From positions 44,618,044-44,682,043 of the forward strand of contig NC_068991.1 in the NCBI RefSeq assembly GCF_001194135.2: 64,000 nt of DNA, in the 5' to 3' direction. Every line of letters starts with the position of its first letter. Within the stretch, counting starts at the first letter, position 1. Source of the stretch: Octopus bimaculoides (lineage: Eukaryota). The position numbers were made by a program, and so were the translations under genes. A model generated the notes under the pieces. It had not been told where the DNA came from and did no database searches. It was given only the letters and a program-made list of their open reading frames with translations. Shown in pieces: positions 11,898-64,000 of the stretch.

Positions 11898-12544
11898 NNN
11901 NNNNNNNNNNNNNNNNNNNNNNNNNNNNNNNNNNNNNNNNNNNNNNNNNNNNNNNNNNNNNNNNNNNNNNNNNNNNNNNNNNNNNNNNNNNNNNNNNNNN
12001 NNNNNNNNNNNNNNNNNNNNNNNNNNNNNNNNNNNNNNNNNNNNNNNNNNNNNNNNNNNNNNNNNNNNNNNNNNNNNNNNNNNNNNNNNNNNNNNNNNNN
12101 NNNNNNNNNNNNNNNNNNNNNNNNNNNNNNNNNNNNNNNNNNNNNNNNNNNNNNNNNNNNNNNNNNNNNNNNNNNNNNNNNNNNNNNNNNNNNNNNNNNN
12201 NNNNNNNNNNNNNNNNNNNNNNNNNNNNNNNNNNNNNNNNNNNNNNNNNNNNNNNNNNNNNNNNNNNNNNNNNNNNNNNNNNNNNNNNNNNNNNNNNNNN
12301 NNNNNNNNNNNNNNNNNNNNNNNNNNNNNNNNNNNNNNNNNNNNNNNNNNNNNNNNNNNNNNNNNNNNNNNNNNNNNNNNNNNNNNNNNNNNNNNNNNNN
12401 NNNNNNNNNNNNNNNNNNNNNNNNNNNNNNNNNNNNNNNNNNNNNNNNNNNNNNNNNNNNNNNNNNNNNNNNNNNNNNNNNNNNNNNNNNNNNNNNNNNN
12501 NNNNNNNNNNNNNNNNNTTTTATATATATATATATATATATCTA

Positions 12545-12575
<31 letters not shown>

Positions 12576-15500
12576 TTATATATTAATATATATGTCTGCG
12601 TGTACATGTGCATGCGTGTGTATTCTGGAACAAAGATTATAGCATAATATTAAATTTCAGTAGGATGGATCCTTCATATTTGAAATTATTTTTCTGAATG
12701 ACAATGAAAGTATTTAAAATGAACAGAAAATCAAGGGTTTAAATAAAACATATAAATTTTGAACAACTGTTACATGTTAGTGTAGAAATAGAAACCAAAA
12801 TTAGAATGATGAAATTAAAACAAAAATATAAATATATGAACATACATATACAGACAAAAGGTAAGAAACACAACTAAATAATAAACATGATTGAAGTGAG
12901 CACTTACAGTCTCCTACCCTCCCCTTCACTCATACACTAACCTTATTAGCAGAATAAGAATGTCAATATATGAAGTCTTATCTACATAATATTACAGTCC
13001 ATGAAATGAGGCCAATAATATAATAATCTCTCTAATTACATGTGTGCATGCACACACACACACACACACACAAACACATACATCAATAATATATATGTGT
13101 GAGTGTGAGTGTGTGCATACATATGCACACATCTACATATATAACACACATACGCACACACATGCATATATATATATATANNNNNNNNNNNNNNNNNNNN
13201 NNNNNNNNNNNNNNNNNNNNNNNNNNNNNNNNNNNNNNNNNNNNNNNNNNNNNNNNNNNNNNNNNNNNNNNNNNNNNNNNNNNNNNNNNNNNNNNNNNNN
13301 NNNNNNNNNNNNNNNNNNNNNNNNNNNNNNNNNNNNNNNNNNNNNNNNNNNNNNNNNNNNNNNNNNNNNNNNNNNNNNNNNNNNNNNNNNNNNNNNNNNN
13401 NNNNNNNNNNNNNNNNNNNNNNNNNNNNNNNNNNNNNNNNNNNNNNNNNNNNNNNNNNNNNNNNNNNNNNNNNNNNNNNNNNNNNNNNNNNNNNNNNNNN
13501 NNNNATATATATATATATATATATATATAAAGCCAAATGTTAGAGGAACTCCATATTTTCTAACATCAATGATTTTAGAAATAATTTCTGATCCATTTCA
13601 AATCAATAATGTTTTACTTTGACCTTATTTCATTTCAACTATATCACATCAGGAAAATAATTACATTAGAATTAATATATTATTATTTTCATCTTCTTTA
13701 CTGTGAAAACCCAGGTGACACTGTTTAGAACTTATTCCAGTTGCAATAGATTTAGTTTGTTCATTTAACATAATCTTGTTACACACACAATCTTTTGACA
13801 AATTCCTACATAGAGCTATTTTGTGACTATGTAAATTCAGAATTCAGCCACCAGATATTAAAGAAATTTCATTAAACTAACGATCAAATAAGTTTGGTGG
13901 ATGACTATTTACTATTAAAGATCTGAGTGTAAAAAAAGAACATTTATTTATTGAAATTCTATTACTCCTCCATGAGTACACAAATTTAAATTGCTCAAAA
14001 TATGTTACTTTACCAAACTGCAGTTTCAAATAAATAAAATGCAATATAAAACAGACAACTAACTGCTTCTTAAAATGAAGAAGCTAGGTTTCACTTCTTT
14101 TAATAGAACAACGTTGTATCTGTTTTTACAATTAGTTTCAAATTACTAATCATACCAGAGCTAAAGTTCATATGAACAGTAAGTTTTATACACTGCATGA
14201 ATAGTACCTATAAAATGTCCAAAATAGAATAAAACAACACACATCCAATGACTTACACACTTATAGAGCCTTACTTAAAAATAATATATCCCTACTACCA
14301 TACATACATGAATGTTGCTGACTTGATTCTAAACAACCTATTTAAGTGTTCATAAAGGGAACCTGTACAAAAAAAACTGCTTGACCAAAAAAAAAAAAAA
14401 CTATTCCATTCTTTGATGATAGTTATACTATGAGATTTACAGCATGTTGTCTATTGACCAGAATAACAGGAGAGAAGAAGATATATTCTTATAGACTAGC
14501 TACTGTCTCATACATACAGACTATTCACTGCGCTAATTACATAAATACACACCCCAAATACATGCATGCATACCAATACATACATATACCCACCCATGCG
14601 TATTGTACATTGTCAAATGGCATACTATGAAGATGGCTTTATGGAGTATACAACAATAAAATAAAGATGCCCGGAAACAGAAATATGCATAAATAATTCA
14701 TATAATACTTCCTTCAGATCAATGTTTATAGATCAGTATAATTTTCAAAATATTTCATTATGTCATTTTTCTTTTGTGGTTCAAGAAAGAAGCTCATATA
14801 TTTATTTACAAATTAATTTTGGAGTATTACTTGGTATTTTTTCAATTGAAATTTAATATAGTCAAAATTATCATTAATTTCTTAAAAAACATCCTTTTAC
14901 TCAAATTGTGTATTATCAAAAGTATTTCACATAGTCCGATGTGATTAATGAAATTATAAAATATTTCAAGATAACTAATTTTAAATTGAGCTGTATGCAC
15001 ACATGATTCACCTTTTTGCTAAATCCTTCTGAAATTAGTCATATCGTTTTACCCGAAATATTAATTCCTTGTCAACTGAAAACTGAAAAACTTTTACTTG
15101 CTAAGACACAAATACCAAGAAAATATTAACCTTTTTGGGCAATGTTCTCATTTCTAACACCCTTTACATCTATGAATGAAAAGTTTCCAATATAAAATGG
15201 AGAAAGAAAAAAATTAAAACTTCAGATATTTTGATAAGAAACTTTTAATGAAATATAATAGCTAAAATTTATTTTATTTCAATATGATTCTTTACTTTGT
15301 CAAACAATATGTTTAGATGATTAAGATTTTACTGTTATACAACAGAATCAGTTGCATGACTGTGAATTCAGACATTTATTAAAATAAATATCAGAATTCA
15401 CAGTTGAAATACAATTGTCTGCCCTGTTCCTAATGCTAATCTTTCAACCTTTTCAGTGGCAAATGGTAGGCTTAATCTGTTACTGATGCTCCTTTAATGT

Positions 15501-20264: not shown

Positions 20265-20973
20265 ATGGGCTGTGACTGCTGAGGACATGCGTAAGCTCAC
20301 AAGGAATGAAGCCAGTATGCTCCGTTGGATGTGTAATGTCAGTGTGCATACCCGTCAGAGTGTAAGTATCTTGAGAGAAAAGCTGAACATTAGAAGCATC
20401 AGTTGTGGTGTGCAAGAGAGACGATTGCGCTGGTATGGACATGTGGTGAGAATGGATGAGGATAGCTGCGTGAAAAAGTGCCACACCCTAACAGTTGAGG
20501 GAACCCGTGGAAGAGGTAGGCCCAGGAAGACCTGGGCTGAGGTGGTGAGGCAAGACCTTCGAACATTGGGCCTCACCGAGGCAATGACTACTGACCGAAA
20601 CCTTTGGANNNNNNNNNNACCATTCTGAGCGTGACCGTTGCCAGTACCGCCTGACTGGCCTTCATAGGATTTTCGAGCGAGATCGTTGCCAGTGCCCCTG
20701 GACTGGCTCTTGTGCGGGTGGCACATAAAAGACACCATTTTGAGTGTGGCCGTTGCCAGTACTGCCTGACTGGCCCTCGTGCGGGTGACACGTAAAAGCA
20801 CCCACTACACTCTCTGAGTGGTTGGCGTTAGGAAGGGCATCCAGCTGTAGAAACTCTGCCAAATTAGATTGGAGCCTGGTGTTGCCATCCGGTTTCACCA
20901 GTCCTCAGTCAAATCGTCCAACCCATGCTAGCATGGAAAGCGGACGTTAAACGACGACGATGATGATGATGAT
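20265..20973 (+). mobile_element. 5'-truncated RTE LINE (ORF C-terminus, 3'UTR and (GAT)n tail)
   Basis: ORF ...MLRWMCNVSVHTRQ...LRWYGHVVRMDE...RGRGRPRKTW; 3'UTR ggttggcgttaggaagggcatcc; ends in acgacgacgatgatgatgat. Confidence 0.9.
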
Positions 20974-25037: not shown

Positions 25038-27337
25038 CTGAATAGAAAAATGTAAAATTAAATAACTGAAGGAAAATAAGCAATGGATCCAATTAAAGCA
25101 TCTTTAGAAATATATAAATATATCAAATGTCTGTGTTTTCGAAATGTTTATACAGTATATTTTTGCAGTACATTTATTCTAGAAATGTTTCTCTACATAT
25201 TAAAGGCAATATTTTCCTTTCTGAACAAACAAATAAAAACATTTAATGAGTAGATTTCAAGTATTTCAGATCTACAAAAAGAAAGAAGGTAGTGCATATT
25301 TTCTAAAGTAATAACAAATTTACAATATTGTTAAAGTTTGTAGATTTAGATAATTTCAAATTTTGTTGGGAAATGTGAGTGTTGGGGTTCTGATCATTAG
25401 TGATTGGCAAGTTTCCTCAGACTCTGATCTTATTTGTTATTTACAAGTATTTATTAAATAATTAAGTGAATGAAATTTTGATCTCATAGTTCAAGAGCTT
25501 GTATGTGGTTACTTAAATGTAATCTGTTCAAGATAAGATAATACATATATCCTGGTTCAAATAACTGACAATAGAAGAAGAAATGAAACAGCTTGACAAC
25601 AATGAAACAGATTGACAGTGTGTTTAACTAATATATAACTGATGAATAGTTTGGTAATTTTTAATACTAAATTGAATCCTTTTACACAAGAATAATTGAA
25701 ACTATGATGAAAAGAGAGAAAATTAACAAAATAGAGTTGCTACTTGCCATGAATTGTAATAGAATTGTGGTAGCCATTTAAAACATATGTACATCATTAT
25801 ATTTGCTTTTGCTTTATTCTATAATTCCATGCTAAGAATGAATTAACAGCTAAGGTTTTCAATATAAAATGATATTTGATATTATGAGCACTATTTTGAA
25901 ACAGAAAAGAGTAATAAACTCACAGACATTGACCAATAGTATTTTTTCTGTCTAAATACTTGTGGTATTTAATGCCATTTTAGTATTATACATTAAGTAT
26001 CACAGCTTTTATATACACCTATGACCTGGTCACTGATATTCTATTCTAGAGTATGTATTAGAAGTCATTTGTTGGTCAGGTCCTGATAGGCTATGGAGGA
26101 GGTTCGTTTGTTTTTATATTCTTCTATTCTTTTATTTTCTGTCTCATTACCTATTGGTGAACATACACTTTACAGTATTATAGAAAAGAGCATCATTCAC
26201 TTGGCCATAGATGCACAATGAAAAATTTGATAATTAATAATACATAAAACTATTACAAAATAAAAGGGAGTGAGAGTATCAATGTATTTTAAATAGTTAC
26301 ATGGCTCTACCATGAAGCAAGTGTTTCAGTTTCAATACAAGATCTCTAAAACAAATCTTTTGTTAAATAAGTACTTCACAATTAATTTTGTTATAAAATT
26401 CAATAATCTAATACATTTATAGATAAAGTAAAACTGTAATGCTGATCAATTAAGCTATAGTGTAAGTTTTTAAAATTTCCAAATATTTTCAGTAAGATTA
26501 CAATATTTCAGGCTGGATTCAAATCCAGCTTTCTACGATGTACATATCCAATAACAAAAGACCTGATGAGTGGAGATCTAATTGAAACATATTGTAGAAA
26601 TATTGTTGATACAAATACTGAAAATGCTTCATCTTTTAAAGATGGAGTTAATTATCTGAAAAATTATCTTGTTAACAGCAAGTAATCTCAGATGTTTAGG
26701 CATTTAATTTTCACTAAACTTAAGTTTCTGTTTGATATGCTATGAAACTAATCACTTTCCCTATCATATCACAATGTTGCATGAGACTAGTGTATTTTCT
26801 TCTTTTAGATAGCACTGAAAAAAACAGACGAATCAGTCTCAAATATAAACAGGCATATTGCAAGCAGAGCTGTCTTAGCAGCATTGTAGGCCTCTGGGCA
26901 AACCATGTACAGGGCCCTATGATATTTATTTACTGACAAGGCAAAGCATAACTAGATCAGAATTGGACTGCTAGACCTGTGGGGCCCCTGGGAAATTGCC
27001 CAATGTGCTCATGCCTAAAAACTACACTGACTGCAAGTAGTCATTTCTTCCACAGTATGAATTGATCTTGGTGTATTGAGCCAATGAATTATTTGTCAAG
27101 TTGCAGAAGTGAATTATATCTCAATATACCTATTTAGATTTGTGTAAATTTAATAATTGAGAGTTAGGTATCTTGGACACAAACTCATGCATTATTAGTG
27201 AAACAATCTGAACTGTGGACCAATCAACTGGTTGTTTCATACCGATTGAATTGATCATCCATTTTCTCAGATATACCAGTAGAGAGGAGAAAAAGAGCAC
27301 ACAAAAAAGTGCAGTATATATTTTATGTTCCTCTTAC

Positions 27338-27541
27338 CTTTATTTAAAACATGTTCCATCCACTCTTCATCTGTAATATTCTCATTATCCACAATATTTT
27401 TAATACACTTGCTACGTAATGTTCCTTGGTAGAGTTGCATACCAATTAGTGCAAAGATGGACAACATGAAGCACGTAAGTATCATTACATCTCTTAACCG
27501 TCTGACGGCTTCTAATAAGGCACCCACGATTGTTTTTAAAC
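27338..27541 (-). CDS. Nav1: Nav alpha subunit coding exon 6 (domain I S4-S5 linker, S5)
   Basis: (G)[67 protein letters not shown]; acceptor gttcacag, donor gtaaga; 204 nt. Confidence 0.97.
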
Positions 27542-27749
27542 CTGTGAACACAAATAAATAAGTAAATTAGTAATTTGTACAAAGCATTTCTATTTTACCT
27601 TATCTACCAGTCACCACTGAAGAAGAATAGAAATGAGTAAAAGGTAAACAACAAAGTAAACAAAAATTATTGCTGTGGAATAAGGGAGCTCTTCTTTAAG
27701 CTAGAAATGAATAGGAATATAAGTCCCCATATCAACAGAGTAAAATGAT

Positions 27750-30700
27750 GGCACTCTAAATGTATGCACATTGAAAGGTAGGTCTAGCGAGATTGTAGAG
27801 ATGCTTGAATGGAGACGTGTTGATGTATGTTGCGTACAAGAGATAAGATGAGGAGGAGCTTCAGCCAGAGTCCTCACAGGCAAAGTACATAGGTATAAAC
27901 TCTTGAGGGTAGGTAATAGTGATGGAATAGGGGATGTGGGCATACTTCTTGCAGAGAAATGGGTGGATAAGGTCATAGAGGTAGTGAGGGTGTGCGATAG
28001 AGTACTTAAACTCAGGCTAGTCTTGCAGAATAGTATAGCTACAATTATCTCTGCCTACGCCCCACAAGCAGGCCTACCAAATGAACAGAAGGATCACTTT
28101 TATGATATTCTTCTGCAGGCTACTTCAAAGATGAGTCACAATGATCTCATCTTTAAGGCTGGAGATTTCAATGGGCATGTTGGACAGCAATCTGGTATCT
28201 TCCAAGGTGTACATGGGGGCCATGGAGTTGGTACCAGAAATGAAGAGGGAACTAGGCTCCTGGAGTTCTGCAATGCAAATAAGCTATTGATCTGCAACAC
28301 CAACTTCAGGAAGCCAGCTAGCCACCTGATAACCTATCAATCTGGTGACTCTGCTAGCCAGATCGATTTCATTCTCACCAGATAGTGGGATGCATGGTTG
28401 CTCTTAAATACAAAGACCCTCCCTGGTGAAGAATGCACCCCCACAACATAGACTAGTTATTAGTGACTTTAGACTTGAGGCCAGAAGGATGCCAAAAAGC
28501 AGACCAATCTGGAAAAGGACTTGTAAGCTTAGGAACCCTACACATGGTCAGAGATTTAGGGATACCCTTACTGAGAAATTTGATGATAGGGAGGAGGAGC
28601 TACAGTCTTGTGACATAGAAGGCAGCTGGGAATTCTTTGCGAGACAGCTTGCTGAGTGCCACAGACCAAATCTGTGGCTGGTGCAATGTCCCTTCCAGAC
28701 CCAGGGTAACATGGTGGTAGAACAATACCGTAGACAGGGCCATTAGATGAAAGAAACAAGTTTGGAATGCCTGGAAGAGTGGGGGTAGCAGGAAAATGTA
28801 TCAGGTAGCCAAAAGAGAAGCTAAGAGACAGGTATATATAGCCAAGGGAGTAGCAGAAAGGAAGAAGTTTGCCTATGTTCAGCGATGTGAGGACCAAAGA
28901 CCTGAAGTATTTCAGATTGCAAGATAGTGTGTGAGAGAAAACCATGATGCCATAGGAGAGATGGATGATGGTGTCCTTACGTTTAATGATTCTGCAAAGA
29001 AAGAGGTTTGGAGATGCCATTATGAAAGACTGCTGAATGGGAGAATGAATGGGAGGAGGAGAGTCTGCCAAAGGTTGACCCAATTGAGGAACCAGCTATC
29101 CAAATCAACAGTACCCAGGTAGATAAAGCAATTAAGGATATGAAGACAGGGAAAGCACCTGGCCCATCAGGAATCACTGCTGGGATGCTTAAAATATCAG
29201 GCGGTGTGGGTTATGTTCCTGTGCCCCGCATCATAACTCAGGTAGTTAATGAAGGAGTCATACCCAATGACTGGTGTAGCAGCACCATAGTCAACTGCTA
29301 CAAGGGGAAAGGTGATGTTTTAGACAGAAATAACTACAGGGGTATCAAATTATTGGACCAGGTTATGAAAGTTACAGAAAGAGTCATAGCCCAACTAATT
29401 AGGGAGAGAGTTAGCCTAGATGAGATGCAGTTTGGTTTTGTGCCAGGCAGAAGCACCACTGATGCTANNNNNNNNNNGCCTAGATGAGATGCAGTTTGGT
29501 TTTGTGCCAGGCAGAAGCACCACTGATGCTATATTTCTGGTAAGGCAGCTGCAGGAGAAATACCTAGCCAAAGACAAACCCCTGTACTTGGCTTTTGTTG
29601 AATTGTAGAAAGCCTTTGACAGGGTCCCCCGATCCCTTATCTGGTGGTCAATGCGGAAACTAGGGATAGACGAGTGGCTGGTAAGAGCTGTACAAGCCCT
29701 GTACAGGGATGCTGTCAGTAAGGTGAGGGTTGGCAATGAGTATAGTGAAGAATTCCGAGCAGAAGTAGGAGTTCACCAAGGATCAGTCCTCAACCCCTTC
29801 TTATTCATCATAGTCCTCCAGGAATCCAAGACAGGTTACCACTGGGAGCTCATCTATGCTGATGACCTTGCTCTAAGAGCTGAGTCACTGCCAGAACTGG
29901 AGATGAAGTTTAGGGTGTGGAAGCAAGGTCTAGAATCAAAGGGCATTAGGGCTAACCTAGCAAAAACCAAAGTGTTAGTAAGTAAGAAGGCTGTCAAATC
30001 ACAACCTGCTTCAGACAGATGGCCCTGCTCAATCTGTAGAAAAGGCGTGGGTAGAAACTCCATACAATGTACATGGTGTAAGCTATGGACACATGAAAAG
30101 TGCAGCAATATCAAAGGAAGGTTAATTAGGAAAATAATTTTTGTGTGTGGCAGATGCACTGGGGCAATAAACACTGAAGACATACAGAAAATGGATTTCA
30201 TCACATGCCACGGGGAGAAACTAGAAGTAGTTAATAGCTTCCACTACCTAGGTGACCAAGTCTGTAGTGGGGGTGGCTGCTCTGAGAGTGTAGCGACTAG
30301 AGTAAGAATAGCCTGGGAAAAGTTCAGGGAGCTCCTACCTCTTCTGGCAACTAAGTACCTCTCGCTCAGGGTGAAAGGTAGACTGTATGATGCATGTATG
30401 CGAACTGCCATGCTACATGGCAGTGAAACATGGGCCATGAATCCTGAGGACATGCATAGGCTTGAAAGAAATGAAGCTAGTATGATTCGCTGGATGTGTA
30501 ATGTCAGTGTGCATACATGACTGAGTGTAAGTGCCCCGAGAGAAAAGTTGGGTATAAGAAGCATCAAATGTGGTGTGTAAGAGAGGCATCTATGCAAGTA
30601 TAGTCATGTGTTTACATATGAATGCAGACAGCTGTGCGAGGAAGTGCCACTCCCTAACTGTGGAAGGAACCTGTGGAAGAGGTAGACCCAGGAAGACATG

Positions 30701-42632: not shown

Positions 42633-43916
42633 TTAGGTTGTTCCGAAAATAATGGCTGATTTCAGAAACATAACTTTATTTTGGAAAAATTAACAATAGA
42701 AATGTTTTGATTAGCCAAAGTATGAGCCGTGAGCATCTATGCATCTCTGCCATCAATCAACAAGATTATTTATGCATCGTTGATAAAAACTTATTGGATT
42801 TGATGCTAAGAAATCTTTGAAAGCTGATGTCACCTCTGGTTTGGACCTGAAAGTTTTATCACTTAAAAACGTGTTTAAAGGCTTAAAAAAATGGTAGTCA
42901 GTGGGTGAAAGATAAGGAGAATATGGAGGATGTGGTAAAGTCTCATATCCCAAGTCTGTGAGTTCCTGCAGTGTCATTCTTGCAACATGTGACTTTGCAT
43001 TATCATGGAGCAGAATTGGGCTATGCTGATTCACCAATGCAGGTCTCATTTTTCACAAGTGAGCATGCATTTCAGTGAGTTGATTGCAGTAAACCTCTGC
43101 TGTAATGCTCTGATTGGCTTCCAGAAAGCTGTAATGAACAACACCAATTGCAGACCACCAGACAGTCACCATAATCTTTTACTGATGCAACTTTGGCTTT
43201 GGAAAATGTTTGGGGGACTCATCATGATCAAGCCATTGACCTGATCATTTATAGTTATCATAAAGGATCCACTTTGCATCACAAGTGGCTATTTGGTCAA
43301 GAAAAAGATCATTGGTGTTTCGCAGAAAGAGCATTGAGCACACTTCAAAATGCTGAACTTTTTGATTTTCATTGAGCTCATGCTGTACCCATTTATCAAG
43401 CTTTTTCACCTTACCAATCTTCTGCAGATTGTGTGAAACTGTTGCAATACTGACACCAAGTGCCTGAGACATTTCTTTGACACTTTGACGTGGGTTTTGT
43501 TCAACAATTGCTTTTCAATTGTTCATTGTCAAGACTGCCTGACTGTCTTCTTTCTTCTTGATCTTCAACGCACTCATCACCACAACAGAATTTCTGAAAC
43601 CACCTTCGTACTGTGTGATCACTTGTGGACCCTCTCCCTATGCTCTGTTGAAATTGGCAGCAGTTTGGGAGGCATTGTGCCCAAGCTTGAACTCATGCAA
43701 GAAAAGTAAGCAAAGGTCCTTTTTTGTCATGTTCATAATTAAGGGTGCCTATGCTTCAAGAATGTTTTCTGTCTGAAATAAGTAGAAAATTATTAAAGAG
43801 CATACATCAATTATTAGGTATGTCAAAATTCACCTAAAATATTATTAAAATACTATGATAAAATTGCATTTCAAAACACAACACTTAGAGTGGCCATTAT
43901 ATTTGGAACAACCTAA
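42633..43916 (-). mobile_element. Full-length, inactive mariner transposon (1284 bp)
   Basis: TIRs ttaggttgttcc.aa.ataatggc at both ends with TA flanks (42631-42632, 43917-43918). Transposase fragments WVQHEL..TCDAKWILYDN and HDNAKSH..HPPYSPYLSPTDYHFF are split by frameshifts. Confidence 0.92.
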
Positions 43917-46409: not shown

Positions 46410-46691
46410 CTTCATATTATGATAGTACTCATCAAGATCTTCCAGTGGCCGACCCTGAAACTTTCCAGGCACCTCCCCAATAGAAGGGGGAAGGCCTTTA
46501 CCAGCTTCAAACTTAGGATTCGGCTTCAGTTCCATTACATTTTCTTCTTCATCAGAATCTGCGTCCTCTGCTTGAGCACGCCTCTCGGCAATCCGGCGTT
46601 CGATGTCAAACAAGGTTTCCCTTGTGAACAGCCGGAAATACCCGGAACTACGAGTATCTGCTTCAGCTTCCACATCTCTGTCCGTTTCCAT
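46410..46691 (-). CDS. Nav1: Nav alpha subunit coding exon 1 (cytoplasmic N-terminus)
   Basis: METDRD...FRLFTRETLFDIERRIAERR...KPNPKFEAGKGLP...GRPLEDLDEYYHNMK; strong Kozak aaagccATGg; donor AAG|gtttgt. The ORF-track start at 46703 is a GTG. Confidence 0.95.
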
Positions 46692-46777
46692 GGCTTTTAT
46701 CACTACTCTCCTTCTTAGCTAGCACCAACCACACTGATTCTAAAAAATGATCCAGTGTAGCATCCTTTGAGGAAATA
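46692..46777 (-). other. 5'UTR part of the start-codon exon (so an upstream non-coding exon must exist)
   Basis: Polypyrimidine acceptor gctttcttttcag ending at 46778. Confidence 0.75.
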
Positions 46778-48800: not shown

Positions 48801-50198
48801 TATCCCCAGTACTAAATAGGAAATGTATGTAGTAGGTAATCATACCCCCCATACCCTCAGTTTACATTTATATACAGGTAGAATAGTTAGTGGGCTGTTA
48901 TATAGATGTGTGTGTGTGTGTGTCTGTGTGTGTGTGTGTGCATACATATACGTATATGTATATGCACATGTATGTAGGCAAATGGATATGAATGCAAACA
49001 GATAGATATAAAGATGGATAGGTACATAGGTAATATGAACAGACAAGCACACATACACATGCAAATGAAGACTGAAACACCTGACCATATACACACACAC
49101 TTCACTTTACACAAGGATACATATGGAGACACACATCCATACATACATAGTACATAGTCACAAAAACCCATACACGGACACACTCAGACATGCACACACA
49201 AGGAGACAGAGGTACACACACACACATGCAAACACACACACACAAAACACACAAACACATGAATATGCAGAATACATGCATGTAAATGTACACACATACA
49301 TATATACATACGTACACACACACACATACACGCATACTTTCACTTACATGCATACATACATACATACATACATACATGTGTATGCACACACACACACTGA
49401 CCCACACACATGTGCACAAACAAACAAAAAGAACGCAGCTTAGATAATGGACAGAGTCAATGACTATTGAAAAGGTTGCANNNNNNNNNNNNNNNNNNNN
49501 NNNNNNNNNNNNNNNNNNNNNNNNNNNNNNNNNNNNNNNNNNNNNNNNNNNNNNNNNNNNNNNNNNNNNNNNNNNNNNNNNNNNNNNNNNNNNNNNNNNN
49601 NNNNNNNNNNNNNNNNNNNNNNNNNNNNNNNNNNNNNNNNNNNNNNNNNNNNNNNNNNNNNNNNNNNNNNNNNNNNNNNNNNNNNNNNNNNNNNNNNNNN
49701 NNNNNNNNNNNNNNNNNNNNNNNNNNNNNNNNNNNNNNNNNNNNNNNNNNNNNNNNNNNNNNNNNNNNNNNNNNNNNNNNNNNNNNNNNNNNNNNNNNNN
49801 NNNNNNNNNNNNNNNNNNNNNNNNNNNNNNNNNNNNNNNNNNNNNNNNNNNNNNNNNNNNNNNNNNNNNNNNNNNNNNNNNNNNNNNNNNNNNNNNNNNN
49901 NNNNNNNNNNNNNNNNNNNNNNNNNNNNNNNNNNNNNNNNNNNNNNNNNNNNNNNNNNNNNNNNNNNNNNNNNNNNNNNNNNNNNNNNNNNNNNNNNNNN
50001 NNNNNNNNNNNNNNNNNNNNNNNNNNNNNNNNNNNNNNNNNNNNNNNNNNNNNNNNNNNNNNNNNNNNNNNNNNNNNNNNNNNNNNNNNNNNNNNNNNNN
50101 NNNNNNNNNNNNNNNNNNNNNNNNNNNNNNNNNNNNNNNNNNNNNNNNNNNNNNNNNNNNNNNNNNNNNNNNNNNNNNNNNNNNNNNNNNNATATATG

Positions 50199-55009: not shown

Positions 55010-55630
55010 GAAATTGTAGTCATAGCCAGTGCTGATGACATGTAAAAGATACCCACTACTCGTGGCTGGTGTTAGGAAAGGCATCCAGCCGTAGGAACCA
55101 ACCCAAATCAAGCTGGAACTTGGCACAGCTGTCTGGGTTACTAGCCCCAGTCAAACCGTTAAAACCATGCCAGCATAGAGAACAGACGCTAAATGATGAT
55201 AATGATGATGATGATATATTTATATAACATACATACATATACATATGAGAAAGAGAAAAAGAGAAAGCAGCAAATATTTTCGTTATGTTGTGGTGTTTAA
55301 AGTGTAGTATTTGAGAAATACTGTTGAAGGGGTCAAAAACAAGATAGATAGAAAACAAGTAAGAGAATGAATGAAAAAGGGAGAAAATGAAAGAAAGAGA
55401 AAACTGAGGGAGACATCACCTTATTACATCTGATATTTCTAACAAGTCGAATGAGAAGATGCATTGAAATATTTTTCTTCTCAAAGAACTCTTTCTACGT
55501 TGTCATTCTCAATCTTTCTTGATTTGAACTCTAGCTTCTCCCCCACCCACTTTAGCTTCAATTTTATAAATATTCGTGAATTTTTACAAACAATACACAA
55601 TGTTTCAAGCGAACTACAATACACTGTTAC

Positions 55631-55828
55631 CTTTTACTCATACGTTTGGTGATTTCTCCGCGAGGAATACGGGCACTGATACTGTCGCCACGCAGGAGCG
55701 ATAAGGTTCTAAGTTATTGCGTAACATTGTAAAACGTTGTCTGCTTAGAATTGGAAAGACAGGAAAAGTTCGGTTGTTTCCGGATAGTTTCGGCTTCAAC
55801 GTAAACGGGTTGACCTTACAGTACATGA

Positions 55829-55830
<2 letters not shown>
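55631..55830 (-). promoter_or_regulatory. Candidate non-coding first exon and TSS region of the Nav gene
   Basis: CpG-rich unique sequence downstream of (CT)n/(CA)n tracts; donor AAG|GTAACA at 55630 (alternative AAC|GTATGA at 55643); has an inverted paralog at 63330-63530. Confidence 0.6.
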
Positions 55831-55873
<43 letters not shown>

Positions 55874-55937
55874 NNNNNNNNNNNNNNNNNNNNNNNNNNN
55901 NNNNNNNNNNNNNNNNNNNNNNNNNNNNNNNNNNNNN

Positions 55938-55984
<47 letters not shown>

Positions 55985-55989
<5 letters not shown>

Positions 55990-56213
55990 TAGTGTTGCTT
56001 CAGAACTGGTATCGTAAGATCGCCGAGGCAATAAACTGGCCGGCTTTTGGAATAGCTAAAATTGGGAATACCTCATGGAGAAGGAAAAGGGCACAAAATT
56101 GGGGGACAAAAATTTAAAAGATTGAAATGAGCTTAAACTCAGCCACAGGCCCTGATGGATTTCCAGCTATCTTCTTACAGAAATGCAAAGGTGCTCTAGC
56201 AAATTTCCTGTTA
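55985..56213 (+). mobile_element. CR1/L2-like LINE RT fragment interrupted by a Helitron-like insertion
   Basis: SLNSATGPDGFPAIFLQKCK matches the RT N-terminal (S/A)xGPDG motif. Confidence 0.55.
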
Positions 56214-57290
56214 TCTATATATATAAAAATGAGAATGTGTGTGTGTCTGTCTGTCTGTCTGTGTGAATCCCTAAAACTCGAGAACTACGCAACCAATTTC
56301 ATTCAAATTTTACACATGCCTTACTTAGGGTTCCAGTTGTGTTTTAGTCAAAAAATTTTAACTTCTTGCAGAGTTCGAGCCCACGGCAACATAATATCTC
56401 CTCCACTATTTAAGTATTACGTGTCAAAAGTGAAACAAAAACACTCATGTCAAATACTTTCACTTTAAAAATGAAACTATTCTACTAACTGAAACAATCA
56501 CATTTCGATACTGTAATGACAGATACTTTCAGAGAGAGAGAGAAAGAGAGAGAGAGAAAGAGAGATGTATATGTATACATATAGATGNNNNNNNNNNNNN
56601 NNNNNNNNNNNNNNNNNNNNNNNNNNNNNNNNNNNNNNNNNNNNNNNNNNNNNNNNNNNNNNNNNNNNNNNNNNNNNNNNNNNNNNNNNNNNNNNNNNNN
56701 NNNNNNNNNNNNNNNNNNNNNNNNNNNNNNNNNNNNNNNNNNNNNNNNNNNNNNNNNNNNNNNNNNNNNNNNNNNNNNNNNNNNNNNNNNNNNNNNNNNN
56801 NNNNNNNNNNNNNNNNNNNNNNNNNNNNNNNNNNNNNNNNNNNNNNNNNNNNNNNNNNNNNNNNNNNNNNNNNNNNNNNNNNNNNNNNNNNNNNNNNNNN
56901 NNNNNNNNNNNNNNNNNNNNNNNNNNNNNNNNNNNNNNNNNNNNGCAATGTGGTGCATAAATTGTCAAGTAAATGAGACGCATCTTTGCCTCCACTGATT
57001 CACTTGCAAAGTGTTGAGTAAAATTATTTCGTTGCAGACCTCCTTTGGGTCTTTTTATTATCACTGCGACACACATAGTCCCCAGTTAGTAACATTGATT
57101 TCAAGGCCCTCCTAGATGAGAGACTGGCATTTCACTTAATGTCTATGTTCCATGCTGGCATGGATTGGAGAGTTATTAATGTAGAAATATGGTATCGTAG
57201 CTACTAACAGTTGAGGGTTGCATAGTCTAGACGGCGTTTTTAGATTTCATTATTCTCTTTAACCCGGGCAAAGCCGGGTATTTCTGCTAG
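56214..57290 (+). mobile_element. Non-autonomous Helitron-like element
   Basis: A|TCTATATATATAAAAATGAGAATG(TG)n(TCTG)n 5' end; 3' hairpin acccgg-gcaaag-ccgggt (57262-57279) followed by CTAG|T; inserted in AT with no TSD. Confidence 0.8.
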
Positions 57291-57672
57291 TATAGAATAC
57301 AGGAATACTTTGATGCCCCTCACTCCCTATAACTCCAATTTTGTAAGCTGTAGAGAAGGGATGATTTGTTTACATTGAATTTAATAACATACTTTACCTA
57401 CAATTTAGACATTAAACAGTTTATTCATGCGAGTACAGAGACTAATATTATCATCTAACAGGAGCAATAAGGTTCTAAATAATTATTTGTTGTTACACTG
57501 TAAAATGTCGTCTGCTTATAACTAGAAAGTCCGGAATAGTTTCGACTTCAAATGATTAACAATACTGTGTGTGTGTGTTTGTATGCGAGTGTATCTGCCC
57601 GCGGGCAAGCGTAAGAAAGTGGAAGAGAGGTAGATAGATAGATAGATAGATAGATAGGTAGTGAGTGAGAGA

Positions 57673-57718
<46 letters not shown>

Positions 57719-58196
57719 TGAACGAAGGAGTGATAGAAAGAACAATGAAAGGGAGAAATATAAATTATTTCATGCCTACTCGGAGTTTGTCGTTTCTGAC
57801 TTAAAATCGCATTCCACCTTCCTCCTACTTTAATTACTATATAGCAATAATTTAAAAATTCATCAAAAGTAATATTTTTCGCCCCGTATCGAGTTTCCAC
57901 TTATACGCATGCATGTATGTATGTATGTATGTATGTATGTACGTATGTCTGTCTGACTGTCTGTCTGTCTATCTATCTATCTATTATTATTATTATTGAT
58001 ATTATAAAAACCATGAGAGAAGATGGAGATACGATTAGTAAAAGTTTATTAATACATTGACAAGACCCGGTACCTATATTGGTAGGTATTCAACCAGTTT
58101 AATCTGGGATATTTGTATCCCTCCGAGGTTTATATCCTCACCCGTACTTTGGTACACACACACACACCCACACCCACACCCACACACAAATATATA

Positions 58197-58252
<56 letters not shown>

Positions 58253-58390
58253 GTGTATATGTATATATATATATACATATGTACATATGTACATACATAT
58301 GTATATATATACATATCCATACACACACATTTATAAAAATACGTACATACATACATATTTAATACATACATGCATGCCTGCACACATACA

Positions 58391-58421
<31 letters not shown>

Positions 58422-58871
58422 TTGATATTTGAGAATCTACGCAAATAGCGATACATACATACGCACGCATATACACACGTGCGTGTGTATCTGTCGATAG
58501 TTTCGAAATAGAACGATATGTATGTGTTGAAAATGTGTGTGAAAGAGAGGGTATTAAAAAATTAAAAATACAAAACTGATTATTTAAATTACTACCTGAA
58601 TAAAGAAAATCAATGGACACCAACGTAACAAGGATTTCAAGGAAAAATGATACGACACTCTAAATTCAACCCATAAAACAATTTTTCGTGCTTTCCTCCT
58701 GTTTTCTAGTTGACGAACTGAAATTTCAACATGTCAGTCTTCTCATTTGTATGTATATTGTATATATAGATCGATATCTATACATGTTTATTGCCTAGTA
58801 TCTATCTATTAGCAGATAATCCTTTGACGTTGTTTATCTCCATGTATCTATTGTTAAGAAGTAAAAATATA

Positions 58872-58932
<61 letters not shown>

Positions 58933-59018
58933 GATAGATAGATAGATAGGTAGGTAGGTAGGTAGCTAGCTATGTATATCTATCTATCTATCTATCTATC
59001 TGATGAGTTTGTATTTTT

Positions 59019-59111
<93 letters not shown>

Positions 59112-59126
59112 AGCAAACATAACACA

Positions 59127-59860
59127 TCTACTACATATGTGGAAAATGGGTGTGTGTTTGTGGCGTTGTTAGCTAACTCCTCTTACATCGTTTTATTGAT
59201 TTTGATGAAACTTGACACGTGAGTAGAACTCATGTCTGGAAACCTCGTAATATACTTAGATTGGTGAAAAAATCGATAATACGGCCCCTTGAAGGGACCT
59301 TTATATCTACCTCATATAGTTAGGGAAATAACCCATAGCACCTGTACAATATATTTTTAAACACTGAGGGGAAATAACCCATTTCATTGTTTATGTTCGA
59401 TTACTTTGAATATTGATATTTTGTGTGTCCTATTTCTAATTTTTGCAGACAATATCACTTTTATATTTTATTTGACACGTGAGTAGAACTCATGTCTGGA
59501 AATCTTCTGACATACTTAGATTGTTGAAAAAATCGACAATAGGGCTCTTCCAATGGATCCTTCTACCTACTACATATTACTAATATTTTATTTAAACAAC
59601 CCAAAGGAAATAACCCAGAAGGATAGACATATCATTGAGAACAATAGATTTAGTTGGTGGTCTTGTTATTTCTATTCTAGCTTTTGGCGGAGTAGAAGAG
59701 GTTAGAAAGGGTCAAGCGGTGAAGACATTATTTCGGCCTAGCTAAAGGCATCTGGAAAATGCTAAACTGCTGTCAGAGAAAAAGCATTGTTCCACCGTGG
59801 GAAAAGTTCTGTTGCAGTGTTAATTTAAATTTAGCTAGAGTGGATCGAATCCACTTCATG
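59127..59860 (+). mobile_element. Probable non-autonomous Helitron-like element with an internal ~70-bp direct repeat
   Basis: 5' tctactacatatgtggaaaatgg; repeat ttgacacgtgagtagaactcatgtctggaaa..tacttagatt..tgaaaaaatcga at about 59212 and 59472; terminal hairpin gtgga-tcgaa-tccac. No CTAG end seen. Confidence 0.45.
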
Positions 59861-59869
59861 CATGCAAGA

Positions 59870-59936
59870 TCTACTATATATATAAAAGTGCCAACGCATG
59901 TAACCCGCAGATCTTGAGTCACTCTGTTGCTTCTGC

Positions 59937-60006
<70 letters not shown>

Positions 60007-62005
60007 CGCACTTATCCAACAAGCGAACTGCCAGTATCATTTTTCCATCGCCAAGGGTTACAACCAAACCAATCTCTCTTCATGAGTTCATAGATTTACC
60101 TAATGAATACCTATTTTAATTATATTTTAACTGGATTTCCTCTCCCTTTCTAGACAAAGTGAACCACAATAATACCATTGATGTGGAATGTTCATATGTT
60201 TAGCCTATCTCATCCACTATTACATATGTTTAACCTATCCGATGATGGAATACTTGGCCTATAGAATCCTCGCTTGATACGATGTTCCAATAGCTGGGAT
60301 ATTCTAGAAATAATTGTTTGAGACTACGCATACATTCTTATTATATATATATATATATACAGTATCCCACAAAAGTATGTACACCCCTAAAAAATTTCAG
60401 TAAAATTGCCATTACTCTGATAATATCGAAGGAAATCAAACGAAATTTATACTGAATAAGATATATTATACATGAAAAACAATATCGGCGGCAGCAGCAA
60501 CAACAACAACAGCAGCAACATCATATAAAGAATATGTAGTTTTAAGGAGAGTAGGTGACTTTTCAACACACATAACATATATATACGTACATACATACAT
60601 CGGTCTACTATTCACTATTTTCAACTCGAGATTACCTGTGTACGTTTATAAATGTGTGTGTGTCACGTCCTATAACTATCTGTCTCTACTTTTGTGGGGT
60701 CTTCCCTGTTACTGTCACATATTGAGATTTTAAAATTACGTAAAAATTTTCAAATTTGATATATTGAAATAATTTTCCACGTTAATTCCGATTTTGTTAT
60801 TTATTTGTTTCAGAAAAATTGCTGAAAAATATTACTGAAGTTTAAAGTTTAATCAATTTTACCTAATCAGAAAACAGGGTTTCGAAGCTGGCATTTTCTG
60901 CATGATAGCTCTCTATCACAAAATGAAATTAAAATCATTAGGAGGAGGAATTTTTATTAAACAAACGAAAGCAAAGCATTACGACGACCAAGGTTGTAAG
61001 AACTTCGGATCTTTTTGGTTTGACGGGCAACACTTGTTTTCTTAGCGAAACACTTTCAAACTTGGGACACTGGTAGAATGTGTCATATAANNNNNNNNNN
61101 NNNNNNNNNNNNNNNNNNNNNNNNNNNNNNNNNNNNNNNNNNNNNNNNNNNNNNNNNNNNNNNNNNNNNNNNNNNNNNNNNNNNNNNNNNNNNNNNNNNN
61201 NNNNNNNNNNNNNNNNNNNNNNNNNNNNNNNNNNNNNNNNNNNNNNNNNNNNNNNNNNNNNNNNNNNNNNNNNNNNNNNNNNNNNNNNNNNNNNNNNNNN
61301 NNNNNNNNNNNNNNNNNNNNNNNNNNNNNNNNNNNNNNNNNNNNNNNNNNNNNNNNAACCCTAACCCTAAAACCCTAAGCTAAAACCAGTACAAACGCAC
61401 GAACGATGTCATAAATAACAGTGACAAACGAAATATATACCGCTGATAGTTGTTGTTGACAACGGATAGTTGTTGTTGACAAACAACGGCACTAATTTTA
61501 TTCAAGGGAAAAGATCCCGTGACACCGTTGTTTACATTTCACGACATTAATTGTTTTCACCTCAATAGACGTCAGTGATTGGTTGAAATTACCGAACTAC
61601 GACAATTTTTTTACATGAAATAACTTCGAATACAAAATTTTTTATCTGTTCCATAACACAAAATATACAAGTATTCGAAGTTTGAAAGTGTTTCGGTACC
61701 AAAAACACTACATAAAACATAAATGAAAAATGTTGCCCGTCAAATCAAAAAGATCCAGAACTTCTGAAGTTTTAATAAGTCTTAATGAATAAAGTCACGT
61801 GAAATGGTCGAAAAGACATGTAAATAATTCAAAAAGGAAGCCCCCCCCCCCTCAACAAAGTTTCTTTGCGAAAAGTTGCACAAATCTGTCCTGATCAAGA
61901 GGCCTATCTGTCGGGGAAGGCATACTCTGACATGGAATAAACAAAAAATTATATAAGACATTCTATTGTAAAAAATTGCTTGGCAACGACGGGCTACGCA
62001 ACTAG
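59870..62005 (+). mobile_element. Possible Helitron-like element with nested insertions
   Basis: A|TCTACTATATATAAAAG 5' end at 59870 and ggcaacgacgggctacgcaaCTAG|T 3' end at 62005. Pairing of these two ends is inferred. Confidence 0.4.
60997..61765. mobile_element. MITE-like element with inverted ends and an internal (TAACCC)n-like tract
   Basis: ggatctttttggtttgacgggcaaca and cgaaacactttcaaactt (61007-61063) are inverted at 61678-61756; aaccctaaccctaaaaccctaa abuts the internal gap. Confidence 0.7.
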
Positions 62006-63278
62006 TTTCATATAAAGGAAATTATGACTGAACGAAAATAAAGTTTTTTCAAAAAATTTTCTTTTTTTTATATTTATACTTGTCCCTTTCCATCCGTCCC
62101 ATCCTTTCCATTCACAATGTCGTATTCCCAATAATAACTTCTCTTAAATCTCTTAAAGTTCGCTGTTTGTCTGCTAGGGTTGCTACTTTGAGCTGTTCGC
62201 CTTTTAACTATTTTTGGTGCAAAAGTCCATCAAGTTACGTGCCCGCATAATTTTAGTCCTTTTTATTATAATTAAAAGCTTTTCTATTAAAAGTGAAATC
62301 AGAATTTAATTCAAGATTTTCTGTCCAAAATTTTGGTTACATATCACTTCGGCTGCACATTCAGTATTTGCCATTATGAGAGACACATTATAGTGCAAAT
62401 TTCTGTATATTAACAGAAATTTTAGCCAAAATTAGAAGATTAGAAATATTTGAAAATCATCATAGATTTGGAATATTCGTAGAACGAATACTACTAAATA
62501 TAGAATTAATTCATTTTTAATTCACGTTTTTTTCATATACTTTTAATTTCTTTGTTATATACCAGTTTAAATACTTGAAGGTGGCGTGTTGGCAGAATAG
62601 TTAGCTTGCCGGACAAAATGCTTAGCATTGGGATCGATGCAATCGACTAACCCTCCCACTTAAAATGGCTGGCCTTGTACCAAAATTTGAAAGATTTTTA
62701 TAGATATTTCAATATATCATTTTAAATTTCAATGTTTAATTGAATTATTTTAAAGCTGTACGATGGACACAAGTTTCAAGTATTATTGAAAAGGGATAAA
62801 ATTCATTTGAACATTTGTTTTAATACCTAGAGAAGTTTTGGATATCATATATAGACTTAAACGAAATAGTAATTGTTATAAATTACCTATCGAAGGTTTA
62901 AAGAAAATTGAATCCATGGATGCTTATAAATCATGTAAAATTACAGTTTCTACAGCAAAAGAAATTGATTGGGAAACCTTCGAAATTATTACGGAGTAAA
63001 AATAGAAGTTATGTCAATTTGATTTTAATTTAATCAGAATTGAAGTTTTCTAAAATAAATCTTTTAAAAATTCACACGTCTTTATGAAATTTTTTTTGCT
63101 TAGGTGCTTTCATTTGGTACTTTTTACATTTATTCAGTGCATTTTAGCTATGGAAATAGAGCTTGTTAAAATTGTTTTGGAAAAACTGTTGTCTGCCTCA
63201 TTTTCGTTTTTCAAATCTCCCACCCTATGGAGCCACAGCCATCTTTTTCTTCTTCTTCGTCGTCGTCGCCGTCGTTTT

Positions 63279-63314
<36 letters not shown>

Positions 63315-63329
63315 TCTCTCTCTCTCTCT

Positions 63330-63530
63330 CATTTACACATCTTAAGCCAACCACTGAACGTTGAAGCCGAAACTATCCGGAAACAACCGAACTAGTTCTG
63401 GCTTGCCAGTTCTAAGCAGACGACATTTTACAGTGTTACGCAATAATTTAGGACCTCATCGCTCTTGTTTTGATTACAACATCGTTCTCTATACTCTGCA
63501 CAAAAAAGCCATCTAATGTCTAAATACAAG
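63330..63530 (+). promoter_or_regulatory. Candidate non-coding first exon of a divergently transcribed paralog
   Basis: Inverted homolog of 55631-55830: a 36-bp identical block plus a 44/50 block; preceded by (CTA)n(CT)n; donor AAG|GTAAAG at 63531. Confidence 0.6.
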
Positions 63531-64000
63531 GTAAAGTAACTTATTAAATTATTTGAAAAATATTCATCTCTTCTTTACTGCTTACAAAATTGAAGGTAGA
63601 GGGAAGGAAGTATTAGTGTTGAAACCAAGAACGATAAAGACATATTTGAAATAGTTTTTGAAGTGATAGAAATTGTATGCATATAATTCTTCGTTGGAGT
63701 TTTGAAATAGTTGCTGTTACCTCATAGGAGAAGGAAAAAAGCAAGGAATTGGTTGTTTTTATTGTTACATTCATATTCTAGTACTCCTGTGCTTAATACA
63801 ATGTGAATTAGGATTCTGAAAAATTTTTTTTCTCCAAAAATTATTAGTTATTATTATTTTTTTTTTTGCTTCCCAATTCTGTGCCATTTTCCTCCTCTTT
63901 AAGGCACGAAACTTATTCTTGAAGCCCACTATTTGTCTACCTTCTTTTACGTAAGAAACGCTATCATCTCTCTCTGTCACACACACACACACACACACAC

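What the first reader, a model, noticed from the sequence alone, without database searches (positions are those of the whole stretch)
63410..63453. Substitutions between the two copies preserve a nested RNA stem-loop on the predicted transcribed strands
Seen: left copy (transcript sense) UUCUAAG..AACGUU-UUAC-AAUGUU..CUUAGAA (55750-55707); right copy UUCUAAG..GACAUU-UUAC-AGUGUU..UUUAGGA. Five of the six differences in the 50-nt block fall in stems, and every one keeps pairing: inner stem A-U>G.U, G.U>A-U, U-A>U.G; outer stem G-C>G.U, U-A>U.G. The UUAC loop is unchanged. G.U tolerance works only on these strands, which are the strands implied by the splice donors. Inference: a conserved structured 5'UTR element (translation control, localisation or ADAR substrate; coleoids edit neural mRNAs heavily). 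Caveats: all changes are transitions, two could be CpG decay, there is no double compensatory change, and only two sequences are compared.
Basis: partly seen in the sequence, partly recalled or inferred. Interest (0 to 1): 0.7.

Follow-up and report, generated by a model that had tools for sequence, protein, structure and literature searches.

The report
Weak hairpin in duplicated sodium-channel leader exon
The 44-base hairpin lies in a short module (likely promoter edge plus untranslated first exon) of a cephalopod-like voltage-gated sodium-channel gene that occurs three times here; the sequence island around it is conserved, but nothing shows that the RNA stem-loop itself is what is being preserved.

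Summary
The sequence facts are correct. The copies at 55707-55750(-) and 63410-63453(+) differ by five transitions, all in the proposed stems, and all keep pairing on the sense strands.

The case for a selected RNA structure is thin:
- The hairpin is worth only -4.5 and -2.6 kcal/mol, no better than shuffled sequence.
- No pair has a change on both sides.
- The chance probability runs from about 0.01 to 0.3, depending on the test.
- In the right copy's exon context the outer stem has a pairing probability of 0.09.
It evolves at a neutral rate, so it does not settle the question.

What is really there is a module of about 300 nt: a CpG-rich upstream block, a predicted untranslated exon 1 and the start of intron 1. 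It belongs to a Nav1-type sodium-channel gene whose start codon is in exon 2 (46691, - strand).

Two islands resist decay: a 36-nt block that is 100% identical between the left and right copies, and a 58-nt island that holds the hairpin. In that island the unpaired bases are the fully conserved ones. Constraint on primary sequence is the best reading. Orthologues could not be retrieved.

The parts
63410..63453 (+). R copy of the 44-nt proposed nested stem-loop (the finding)
   Evidence: Proposed fold -2.6 kcal/mol, MFE z-score +0.1. Pair probabilities in exon context: outer stem 0.03-0.09, inner stem 0.19-0.31.
55707..55750 (-). L copy of the 44-nt proposed stem-loop
   Evidence: Proposed fold -4.5 kcal/mol, MFE z-score -0.9. 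Pair probabilities 0.26-0.46 in exon 1 alone.
57473..57521 (-).
   Evidence: The covariance model scores it 60.5 bits. Its substitution rate here equals its neutral rate.
63358..63393 (+). R copy of the 36-nt block ACGTTGAAGCCGAAACTATCCGGAAACAACCGAACT, 100% identical to L. It holds three CCG(G)AAAC-like motifs about 10 nt apart.
   Evidence: 0/36 differences where the homologous flanks are about 52% identical.
55767..55802 (-). L copy of the 36-nt block
55631..55812 (-). L module: conserved block through predicted untranslated exon 1, ending AAAAG|GTAAC (donor GT 55630-55629). TSS unknown. It is the most CpG-dense 200 nt of the window.
   Evidence: 14 CpG, o/e 1.6, against 0.28 window-wide.
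57398..57555 (-). M module: a degraded copy. The 36-nt block is truncated or deleted, there are 4 CpG, and it ends TGTAG|GTAAAG.
63348..63530 (+). R module: conserved block through a predicted exon ending ACAAG|GTAAAG (donor GT 63531-63532), in the opposite orientation to the channel gene
46410..46777 (-). Exon 2 of the Nav1-type gene: acceptor cag at 46780-46778, 86 nt of 5'UTR, ATG at 46691-46689, donor GT at 46409-46408
   Evidence: N-terminus matches SCN2A/SCN3A/SCN1A at about 5e-13. Acceptor TTTCAG|TATTT is conserved in contigs L001/L002 of a distant cephalopod.
27267..27551 (-). Further exon of the same gene (domain I S4-S5/S5 region)
   Evidence: Nav1.7 at 7e-24. Pfam Ion_trans at 2e-9.
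63582..63602 (+). Motif in the start of the intron, TTAYAAAATTGRAG..., shared by all three copies (L about 55550-55570, M about 57326-57346, both on the - strand)

Best explanation
The hairpin is part of a module of about 300 nt: an upstream block with three phased CCG(G)AAAC motifs, a predicted untranslated exon 1 and the first 100 nt or so of intron 1. The module belongs to a Nav1-type voltage-gated sodium-channel gene.

Local duplication produced three copies. L is proximal, on the gene strand, and the most CpG-rich. M lies 1.7 kb further upstream on the same strand and is decaying. R lies 7.5 kb upstream and is inverted.

Most of the module has drifted to about 52% identity between L and R. 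Two islands have not: the 36-nt block (100%) and a 58-nt island that contains the hairpin (88%). I read both as elements constrained at the level of primary sequence. They would be binding sites for transcription or initiation factors on the DNA, or for proteins on the 5' leader RNA, used by the promoter and first exon.

The small AU-rich palindrome and the five wobble-compatible transitions are then a by-product, not the selected feature.

Shown: the three copies, the gene and its exon 2 start, the mosaic conservation, the CpG enrichment and the weak fold.
Inferred: that L is spliced to exon 2, where transcription starts, that the islands bind factors, and that R is active.
For: Gene and exon structure:
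- Nav1 identity of the - strand exons.
- ATG in exon 2 and a conserved acceptor.

Copies:
- Three copies and no more in 64 kb.
- Homology of all three runs through the donor into the intron.

Mosaic conservation:
- L-R identity is 36/36 in the block, 39/44 in the hairpin, 12/14 in the tail, about 0.62 in the spacer between block and hairpin, 0.52 in the 3' part of the exon and 0.53 in the intron.
- The island shows 4 observed against 18 expected substitutions on the L/stem branch (P = 9e-6).

Promoter-like hallmark:
- L and R are the two most CpG-dense 200-nt windows of a window with CpG o/e 0.28.

Sequence rather than structure:
- 18/18 unpaired bases are invariant and all variation is in the stems.
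- The fold is no more stable than shuffles.
- No pair changes on both sides.

Vertebrate Nav genes (SCN1A, SCN8A) are known to have several alternative untranslated first exons and promoters (PMC8080386 abstract; reference list of PMC4752963).
Against: - There is no transcript, TSS or orthologue evidence, so the exon 1 assignment rests on position, strand, splice consensus and CpG content only.
- The five differences are all compatible with pairing on the sense strand and not on the antisense strand. That has P = 0.01-0.02 under a null with post-hoc structure choice and is what a wobble-tolerant RNA helix predicts.
- All eight changes in the island are transitions (P about 0.04 at a 2:1 ratio).
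- No transcription-factor or RNA-binding motif was actually identified.
- R faces away from the gene, so its role is unexplained.
Confidence: 0.5

Rival explanations
1. One reading: a nested RNA stem-loop in the 5'UTR is the selected feature, for translation control, localisation or protein recognition of a hairpin. G.U wobble lets transitions accumulate without loss of pairing.
For: - All 5 differences keep pairing, on the sense strands only.
- RNAalifold recovers the structure.
- P = 0.006-0.02 in the more generous tests.
- The island is constrained.
- M's two stem-breaking changes occur in a copy that evolves neutrally, so they do not refute it.
- In L joined to exon 2 the outer stem has pair probability 0.6-0.96.
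Against: - The fold is worth -4.5 and -2.6 kcal/mol, with z-scores -0.9 and +0.1.
- 89% of shuffled blocks do as well.
- In the R context the outer stem has probability 0.09.
- No compensatory pair, and covariation is not above shuffles.
- The loops are more conserved than the stems.
- P(no break) is only 0.23-0.33.
- No Rfam match even at E <= 1.
- The TSS is unknown, so the hairpin may not be transcribed at all.
Confidence: 0.2
2. No selection on the island. The L-R similarity in the 36-nt block and the hairpin island reflects short gene-conversion tracts between the inverted copies, followed by a few mostly transitional mutations.
For: - The 36-nt block is identical in L and R although R's closest relative over the flanks is M.
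- All 8 island differences are transitions, as expected for a young tract.
- Two of them are at CpG sites.
Against: - Two separate tracts would be needed, because the 16-nt spacer between them has 6 differences, 4 of them transversions.
- In the hairpin, four sites still group M with R against L, the same tree as the flanks.
- The homology of about 110 nt is short for efficient conversion in animals (my own knowledge).
Confidence: 0.15
3. R is not truly inverted. Its contig (61357 to at least 64000, bounded by the N run 61091-61356) was placed in the wrong orientation in a gap-rich draft scaffold, so the locus is really a tandem array of three alternative first exons. This bears on the 'two transcribed strands' premise, not on the hairpin itself.
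For: - Ten N runs in the window, one of them directly inside of R's contig.
- Each copy carries a (CT)n/(CA)n microsatellite upstream in its own sense orientation.
- No gene is visible to the right of R in the 470 nt that remain.
Against: No direct evidence of misassembly. Scaffolders usually orient contigs of this size correctly.
Confidence: 0.1
4. L and R act together. A pre-mRNA that starts upstream of R on the - strand would contain the antisense of R and the sense of L, which could pair over about 110 nt at 88% complementarity. That is a long duplex of the kind ADAR edits.
For: Inverted repeat I1 is 120 nt at 86%, with arms 7.5 kb apart. Heavy editing in coleoids is documented (PMC4384741).
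Against: No evidence for any TSS upstream of R. This would not explain the conservation of strand-specific wobble pairs, nor the splice donors at the end of each copy.
Confidence: 0.05

Closest known systems
Alternative untranslated first exons and co-active promoters of vertebrate sodium-channel genes (SCN1A 5'-untranslated exons; SCN8A alternative 5'UTRs)
   Same: Non-coding leader exons lie kilobases upstream of the exon that carries the ATG, and there is more than one of them. They sit in a CpG-rich regulatory region of a Nav1-type gene (PMC8080386; reference list of PMC4752963).
   Different: Here the copies are recognisable paralogues of one another, one of them is inverted, and none has transcript support. 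The vertebrate leader exons are not known to me to derive from one another.
Small cis-regulatory 5'UTR stem-loops, such as the iron-responsive element
   Same: A short hairpin with an invariant loop in a leader exon. Wobble-compatible changes are confined to the stems.
   Different: Curated elements of this kind show covariation across many species and are recognisable by model. This one has no compensatory pair, no stability above background and no Rfam match.
Inverted-repeat dsRNA substrates of ADAR, such as inverted Alu pairs
   Same: L and R are a 110-120-nt inverted repeat at 86-88%.
   Different: The finding concerns an intramolecular hairpin of 13 pairs, not the long duplex. Co-transcription of both arms is not shown.

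Membership tests
Conserved structured RNA element (cis-regulatory 5'UTR stem-loop) | Fold more stable than sequence-matched background | tested here: not met
   z-scores -0.91 (L) and +0.11 (R). Proposed fold -4.5 and -2.6 kcal/mol. 89% of shuffled 120-mers hold an equally stable 44-nt window.
Conserved structured RNA element (cis-regulatory 5'UTR stem-loop) | Covariation: pairs kept through changes on both sides | tested here: not met
   0 pairs change on both sides. The covariation score is reached by 340/500 shuffles. With only 3 sequences the power is very low.
Conserved structured RNA element (cis-regulatory 5'UTR stem-loop) | Pairing retained in all homologues | tested here: inconclusive
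   13/13 pairs in L and R. M loses pairs 3-42 and 13-28, but M evolves at its neutral rate.
Conserved structured RNA element (cis-regulatory 5'UTR stem-loop) | Lies within the transcript | not testable with these tools
   No transcript or TSS data. Exact look-ups of window ORFs found no record.
Conserved structured RNA element (cis-regulatory 5'UTR stem-loop) | Match to a curated family | tested here: not met
   Rfam: nothing at the gathering score over the whole window, and nothing at E <= 1 around the three copies.
Untranslated first exon / promoter module of a Nav1-type gene | Upstream of, and on the same strand as, the exon that holds the start codon | tested here: met
   Met for L and M, which are on the - strand 8.9 and 10.6 kb upstream of exon 2. 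Not met for R, which is on the + strand.
Untranslated first exon / promoter module of a Nav1-type gene | Ends at a splice donor, and the next exon opens with an acceptor upstream of the ATG | tested here: met
   Donors are AAG|GTAAC (L), TAG|GTAAAG (M) and AAG|GTAAAG (R). The acceptor TTTCAG|TATTT is conserved in L001/L002. This is consensus only, and splicing was not observed.
Untranslated first exon / promoter module of a Nav1-type gene | Promoter-like base composition (escape from CpG depletion) | tested here: met
   L has 14 and R 12 CpG per 200 nt, against a window median of 1 and a 99th percentile of 10. Window o/e is 0.28. Part of R's count comes from a (CGT)n run.
Untranslated first exon / promoter module of a Nav1-type gene | Transcript evidence for use as a first exon | not testable with these tools
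   No RNA data for this species could be reached.
Terminal inverted repeats of a DNA transposon / MITE | Sharp outer ends with target-site duplication, and dispersed copies | tested here: not met
   Similarity fades gradually past the outer ends to the donors and into the introns. A third copy lies in direct orientation. There are only three local copies in 64 kb. Genome-wide copy number could not be tested.
Protein-coding exon (either strand) | Excess of synonymous over non-synonymous change in an open frame | tested here: not met
   Frames are open in L and R on both strands, but by my hand translation of the L and R sequences in those frames almost all differences change the amino acid. M has stops in every frame.

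The most novel reading that the evidence does not exclude
A wobble-tolerant stem-loop in the leader RNA is maintained in two oppositely oriented first exons that flank a 7.5-kb CpG-rich region upstream of a cephalopod Nav1 gene. In that case a duplicated, divergently transcribed pair of leaders would share one post-transcriptional control element for a key neuronal channel.
Probability: 0.15. Interest if true: 0.5.

Novelty: new member of a known kind. Interest (0 to 1): 0.25.

Why it matters
If the island proves functional, it marks the promoter and leader of the main neuronal sodium-channel gene of a cephalopod. That would give a handle on how channel expression is controlled in an animal known for unusual RNA-level regulation.

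As it stands, the result is mainly a caution. Wobble-compatible transitions between two AU-rich paralogues are weak evidence for RNA structure. The more robust signals at this locus are the 36-nt invariant block and the CpG-rich domain.

Tried and rejected
Orthologue hunt (failed):
- A search with the exon 2 peptide found only one cephalopod cluster, P0001, at 84% amino-acid identity. Its Logan contigs are at most 1.7 kb and match the window only over exon 2, at 73% nt.
- Exact look-ups of two window ORFs found nothing on record.
- A metagenome scan for the hairpin core found 0 hits.
- A metagenome scan for a 22-nt piece of the block found one GC-rich bacterial contig, L006, which is a chance match.
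- A six-frame peptide query built from L and R found nothing at E <= 10.
- A conserved stretch of 12 residues cannot reach significance, and its hits could not be traced to DNA.

Other checks that gave nothing or were rejected:
- Rfam at gathering and E-value thresholds: nothing.
- A covariance model built from the three copies found no further copy in the window or in L001-L005.
- Coding on the sense or antisense strand: rejected.
- Transposon terminal repeats: rejected.
- A more stable hairpin just upstream in R (-14.5 kcal/mol window) is not kept in L, so it was not pursued.
- I looked by eye for initiator and downstream-promoter motifs around the hairpin. CCA(G/A)TTC directly 5' of it fits YYANWYY in L and R, but I found no DPE or MTE match. 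This is too weak to use.

Full report
**1. The observation**

They differ at five positions: 13 A/G, 16 G/A, 24 A/G, 38 C/U and 43 A/G. All five are transitions, and all lie in the 26 stem positions of a 7-bp outer and 6-bp inner helix. All 13 pairs stay standard in both copies on the sense strands. The two 44-mers are part of a 120-nt inverted repeat, 55693-55812 against 63348-63467, 86% complementary.

**2. Chance**

For five random transitions on this structure:
- the probability that none breaks a pair is 0.23-0.33;
- the probability that all five fall in stems and none breaks is 0.006-0.009;
- if structure and strand are chosen after the fact by RNAalifold, a score as good as observed arises in 1-2% of simulations.

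The hairpin as such is unremarkable:
- MFE is -4.8 (L) and -3.3 (R) kcal/mol, with z-scores of -0.9 and +0.1.
- The proposed fold is worth -4.5 and -2.6 kcal/mol.
- 89% of shuffled 120-mers contain an equally stable 44-nt window, and 13% contain a perfect 7-bp inverted repeat.
- In the predicted exon context, pair probabilities are 0.26-0.46 in L. In R they are 0.03-0.09 for the outer stem and 0.19-0.31 for the inner stem.

**3. A third copy**

A covariance model built from the three finds only these three in the window.

M carries C3>A, which breaks pair 3-42, and U28>A, which breaks pair 13-28. It also has a 5-nt insertion and further changes in the 3' internal loop. On the three-sequence alignment 37 of 39 cells pair, no pair changes on both sides, and the covariation score is reached by 340 of 500 shuffles.

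**4. What the locus is**

- The - strand carries a Nav1-type voltage-gated sodium-channel gene. The peptide from 46691 downward matches the N-termini of SCN2A, SCN3A and SCN1A at about 5e-13.
- The exon at 27267-27551 matches Nav1.7 at 7e-24 and Pfam Ion_trans.
- The ATG (46691) lies 86 nt inside an exon that opens at 46777, behind a pyrimidine tract and cag.
- That acceptor, TTTCAG|TATTT, is conserved in genomic contigs of a distant cephalopod. Those contigs otherwise share only the exon, at 73% nt identity.
- The gene therefore has an upstream non-coding exon.
- L ends AAAAG|GTAAC at 55631, M ends TGTAG|GTAAAG at 57398, and R ends ACAAG|GTAAAG at 63530.
- L and M are on the gene strand, 8.9 and 10.6 kb upstream of exon 2. 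R faces the other way.
- The short ATGs just before the donors are upstream AUGs, not the start of the protein.

**5. Extent and history of the duplication**

- Homology of all three copies continues through the donor and about 100 nt into the intron.
- M and R are sisters, 70-74% identical in the 3' exon part and intron.
- L is the outlier, at about 52% identity, still above shuffles (P < 0.0005).
- Against that background, two islands stand out between L and R. The 36-nt block ACGTTGAAGCCGAAACTATCCGGAAACAACCGAACT is identical (36/36). The hairpin plus a 14-nt tail is 51/58 identical. A 16-nt spacer with 6 differences separates them.
- Lineage-specific counts in the 58-nt island: 4 observed against 18 expected on the L/stem branch (P = 9e-6), 6 against 6.8 on the M branch, and 3 against 5.2 on the R branch.
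- The island is therefore constrained or converted between L and the M/R lineage. M has lost the constraint.
- Consequently M's broken pairs neither confirm nor refute the structure.

**6. Nature of the constraint**

- All 18 unpaired bases are invariant between L and R, and only stem bases vary. The probability of all five differences landing in stems is 0.06. That is the reverse of what a purely structural element usually shows.
- All eight differences in the 62-nt stretch are transitions, and three of them lie outside the hairpin. Two of the five hairpin changes are at CpG sites.
- Coding is excluded. Frames are open in L and R on both strands, but by my hand translation of those frames nearly every difference is non-synonymous. 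M has stops in all frames.
- The window is strongly CpG-depleted (o/e 0.28). L and R are nonetheless its two most CpG-dense 200-nt windows, and the whole 55.6-63.5 kb interval is enriched. This is promoter-like, with the caveat that a (CGT)n run adds to R's count.
- The 36-nt block contains three CCG(G)AAAC-like motifs about one helical turn apart, seen directly in the sequence. That suggests factor binding on DNA. This is inference.

**7. Verdict**

The best-supported reading is a triplicated promoter-edge and untranslated-exon-1 module of a Nav1 gene, with two sequence-constrained islands. The hairpin sits in one of them.

That the RNA stem-loop is itself selected remains possible (about 0.2). 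It rests on one-sided, wobble-compatible transitions in two sequences, with no thermodynamic or covariation support.

Gene conversion (about 0.15) and a misoriented contig for R (about 0.1; it is bounded by the N run 61091-61356) are open side issues.

**8. Known relatives and novelty**

Multiple alternative untranslated first exons and co-active promoters are established for vertebrate SCN1A and SCN8A (PMC8080386; reference list of PMC4752963). I found no paper on a cephalopod Nav leader element and no Rfam family. This is a new instance of a known kind of gene architecture, and the claimed RNA element is unproven.

**9. Limits**

No eukaryotic DNA collection could be pattern-searched. The species of the window and its close relatives are absent from the protein and contig collections I could reach. 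The decisive orthologue and transcript tests therefore remain to be done.

Noticed in passing
window 55767-55802 (-) and 63358-63393 (+): A 36-nt block is 100% identical between L and R, although the homologous flanks are about 52% identical. It contains three CCG(G)AAAC-like motifs spaced about 10 nt apart. It is truncated or deleted in M. This is a stronger conservation signal than the hairpin and is possibly a core-promoter or factor-binding array.
   Followed up: partly
window 55600-63500: This is a CpG-rich domain in a strongly CpG-depleted window (o/e 0.28). 10 of the 15 most CpG-dense 200-nt windows lie between or at L and R, which rank first and second.
   Followed up: partly
window 55637-55639 (-), 57410-57412 (-), 63516-63518 (+): An upstream AUG is kept 11-15 nt before the donor in all three copies (ATGAGTAAAAG| , ATGTCTAAATTGTAG| , ATGTCTAAATACAAG|). 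Spliced to exon 2, the L version would open a uORF of about 38 codons, out of frame with and overlapping the main ATG. The M version stops before the junction.
   Followed up: partly
window 55550-55570 (-), 57326-57346 (-), 63582-63602 (+): A motif TTAYAAAATTGRAG.TA.AG is shared by all three copies 50-75 nt into the predicted intron, within sequence that is otherwise about 50% identical between L and R.
   Followed up: no
window 27903-30520 (+): A LINE-type retrotransposon remnant (endonuclease and reverse-transcriptase ORFs, broken by a short N run) lies inside an intron of the channel gene. A related reverse-transcriptase tail is at 20272-20628 (+).
   Followed up: partly
window 42753-43049 (-): An ORF with a weak DDE-transposase match (Pfam DDE_3, E = 0.008, below the curated cut-off). 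It is probably a mariner/Tc1-like fragment.
   Followed up: partly
window 1285-1712, 11898-12517, 13181-13504, 49481-50191, 55874-55937, 56588-56944, 61091-61356 and three 10-nt runs: There are ten runs of N, mostly inside microsatellites, so this is a gap-rich draft scaffold. The order and orientation of the contig that holds R cannot be taken for granted.
   Followed up: no
window 63360-63410 (+): R alone can form a much more stable hairpin (a 44-nt window at -14.5 kcal/mol) between the 36-nt block and the spacer (GAAGCC...GGCTTG). L does not keep it.
   Followed up: partly
L001 and L002 (Logan contigs ERR3431203, ERR14857104): Contigs from another cephalopod carry the orthologous Nav1 exon 2. 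The 5'UTR part and the acceptor are conserved, but there is no detectable intronic similarity to the window. L001 and L002 differ from each other at a few upstream bases.
   Followed up: partly
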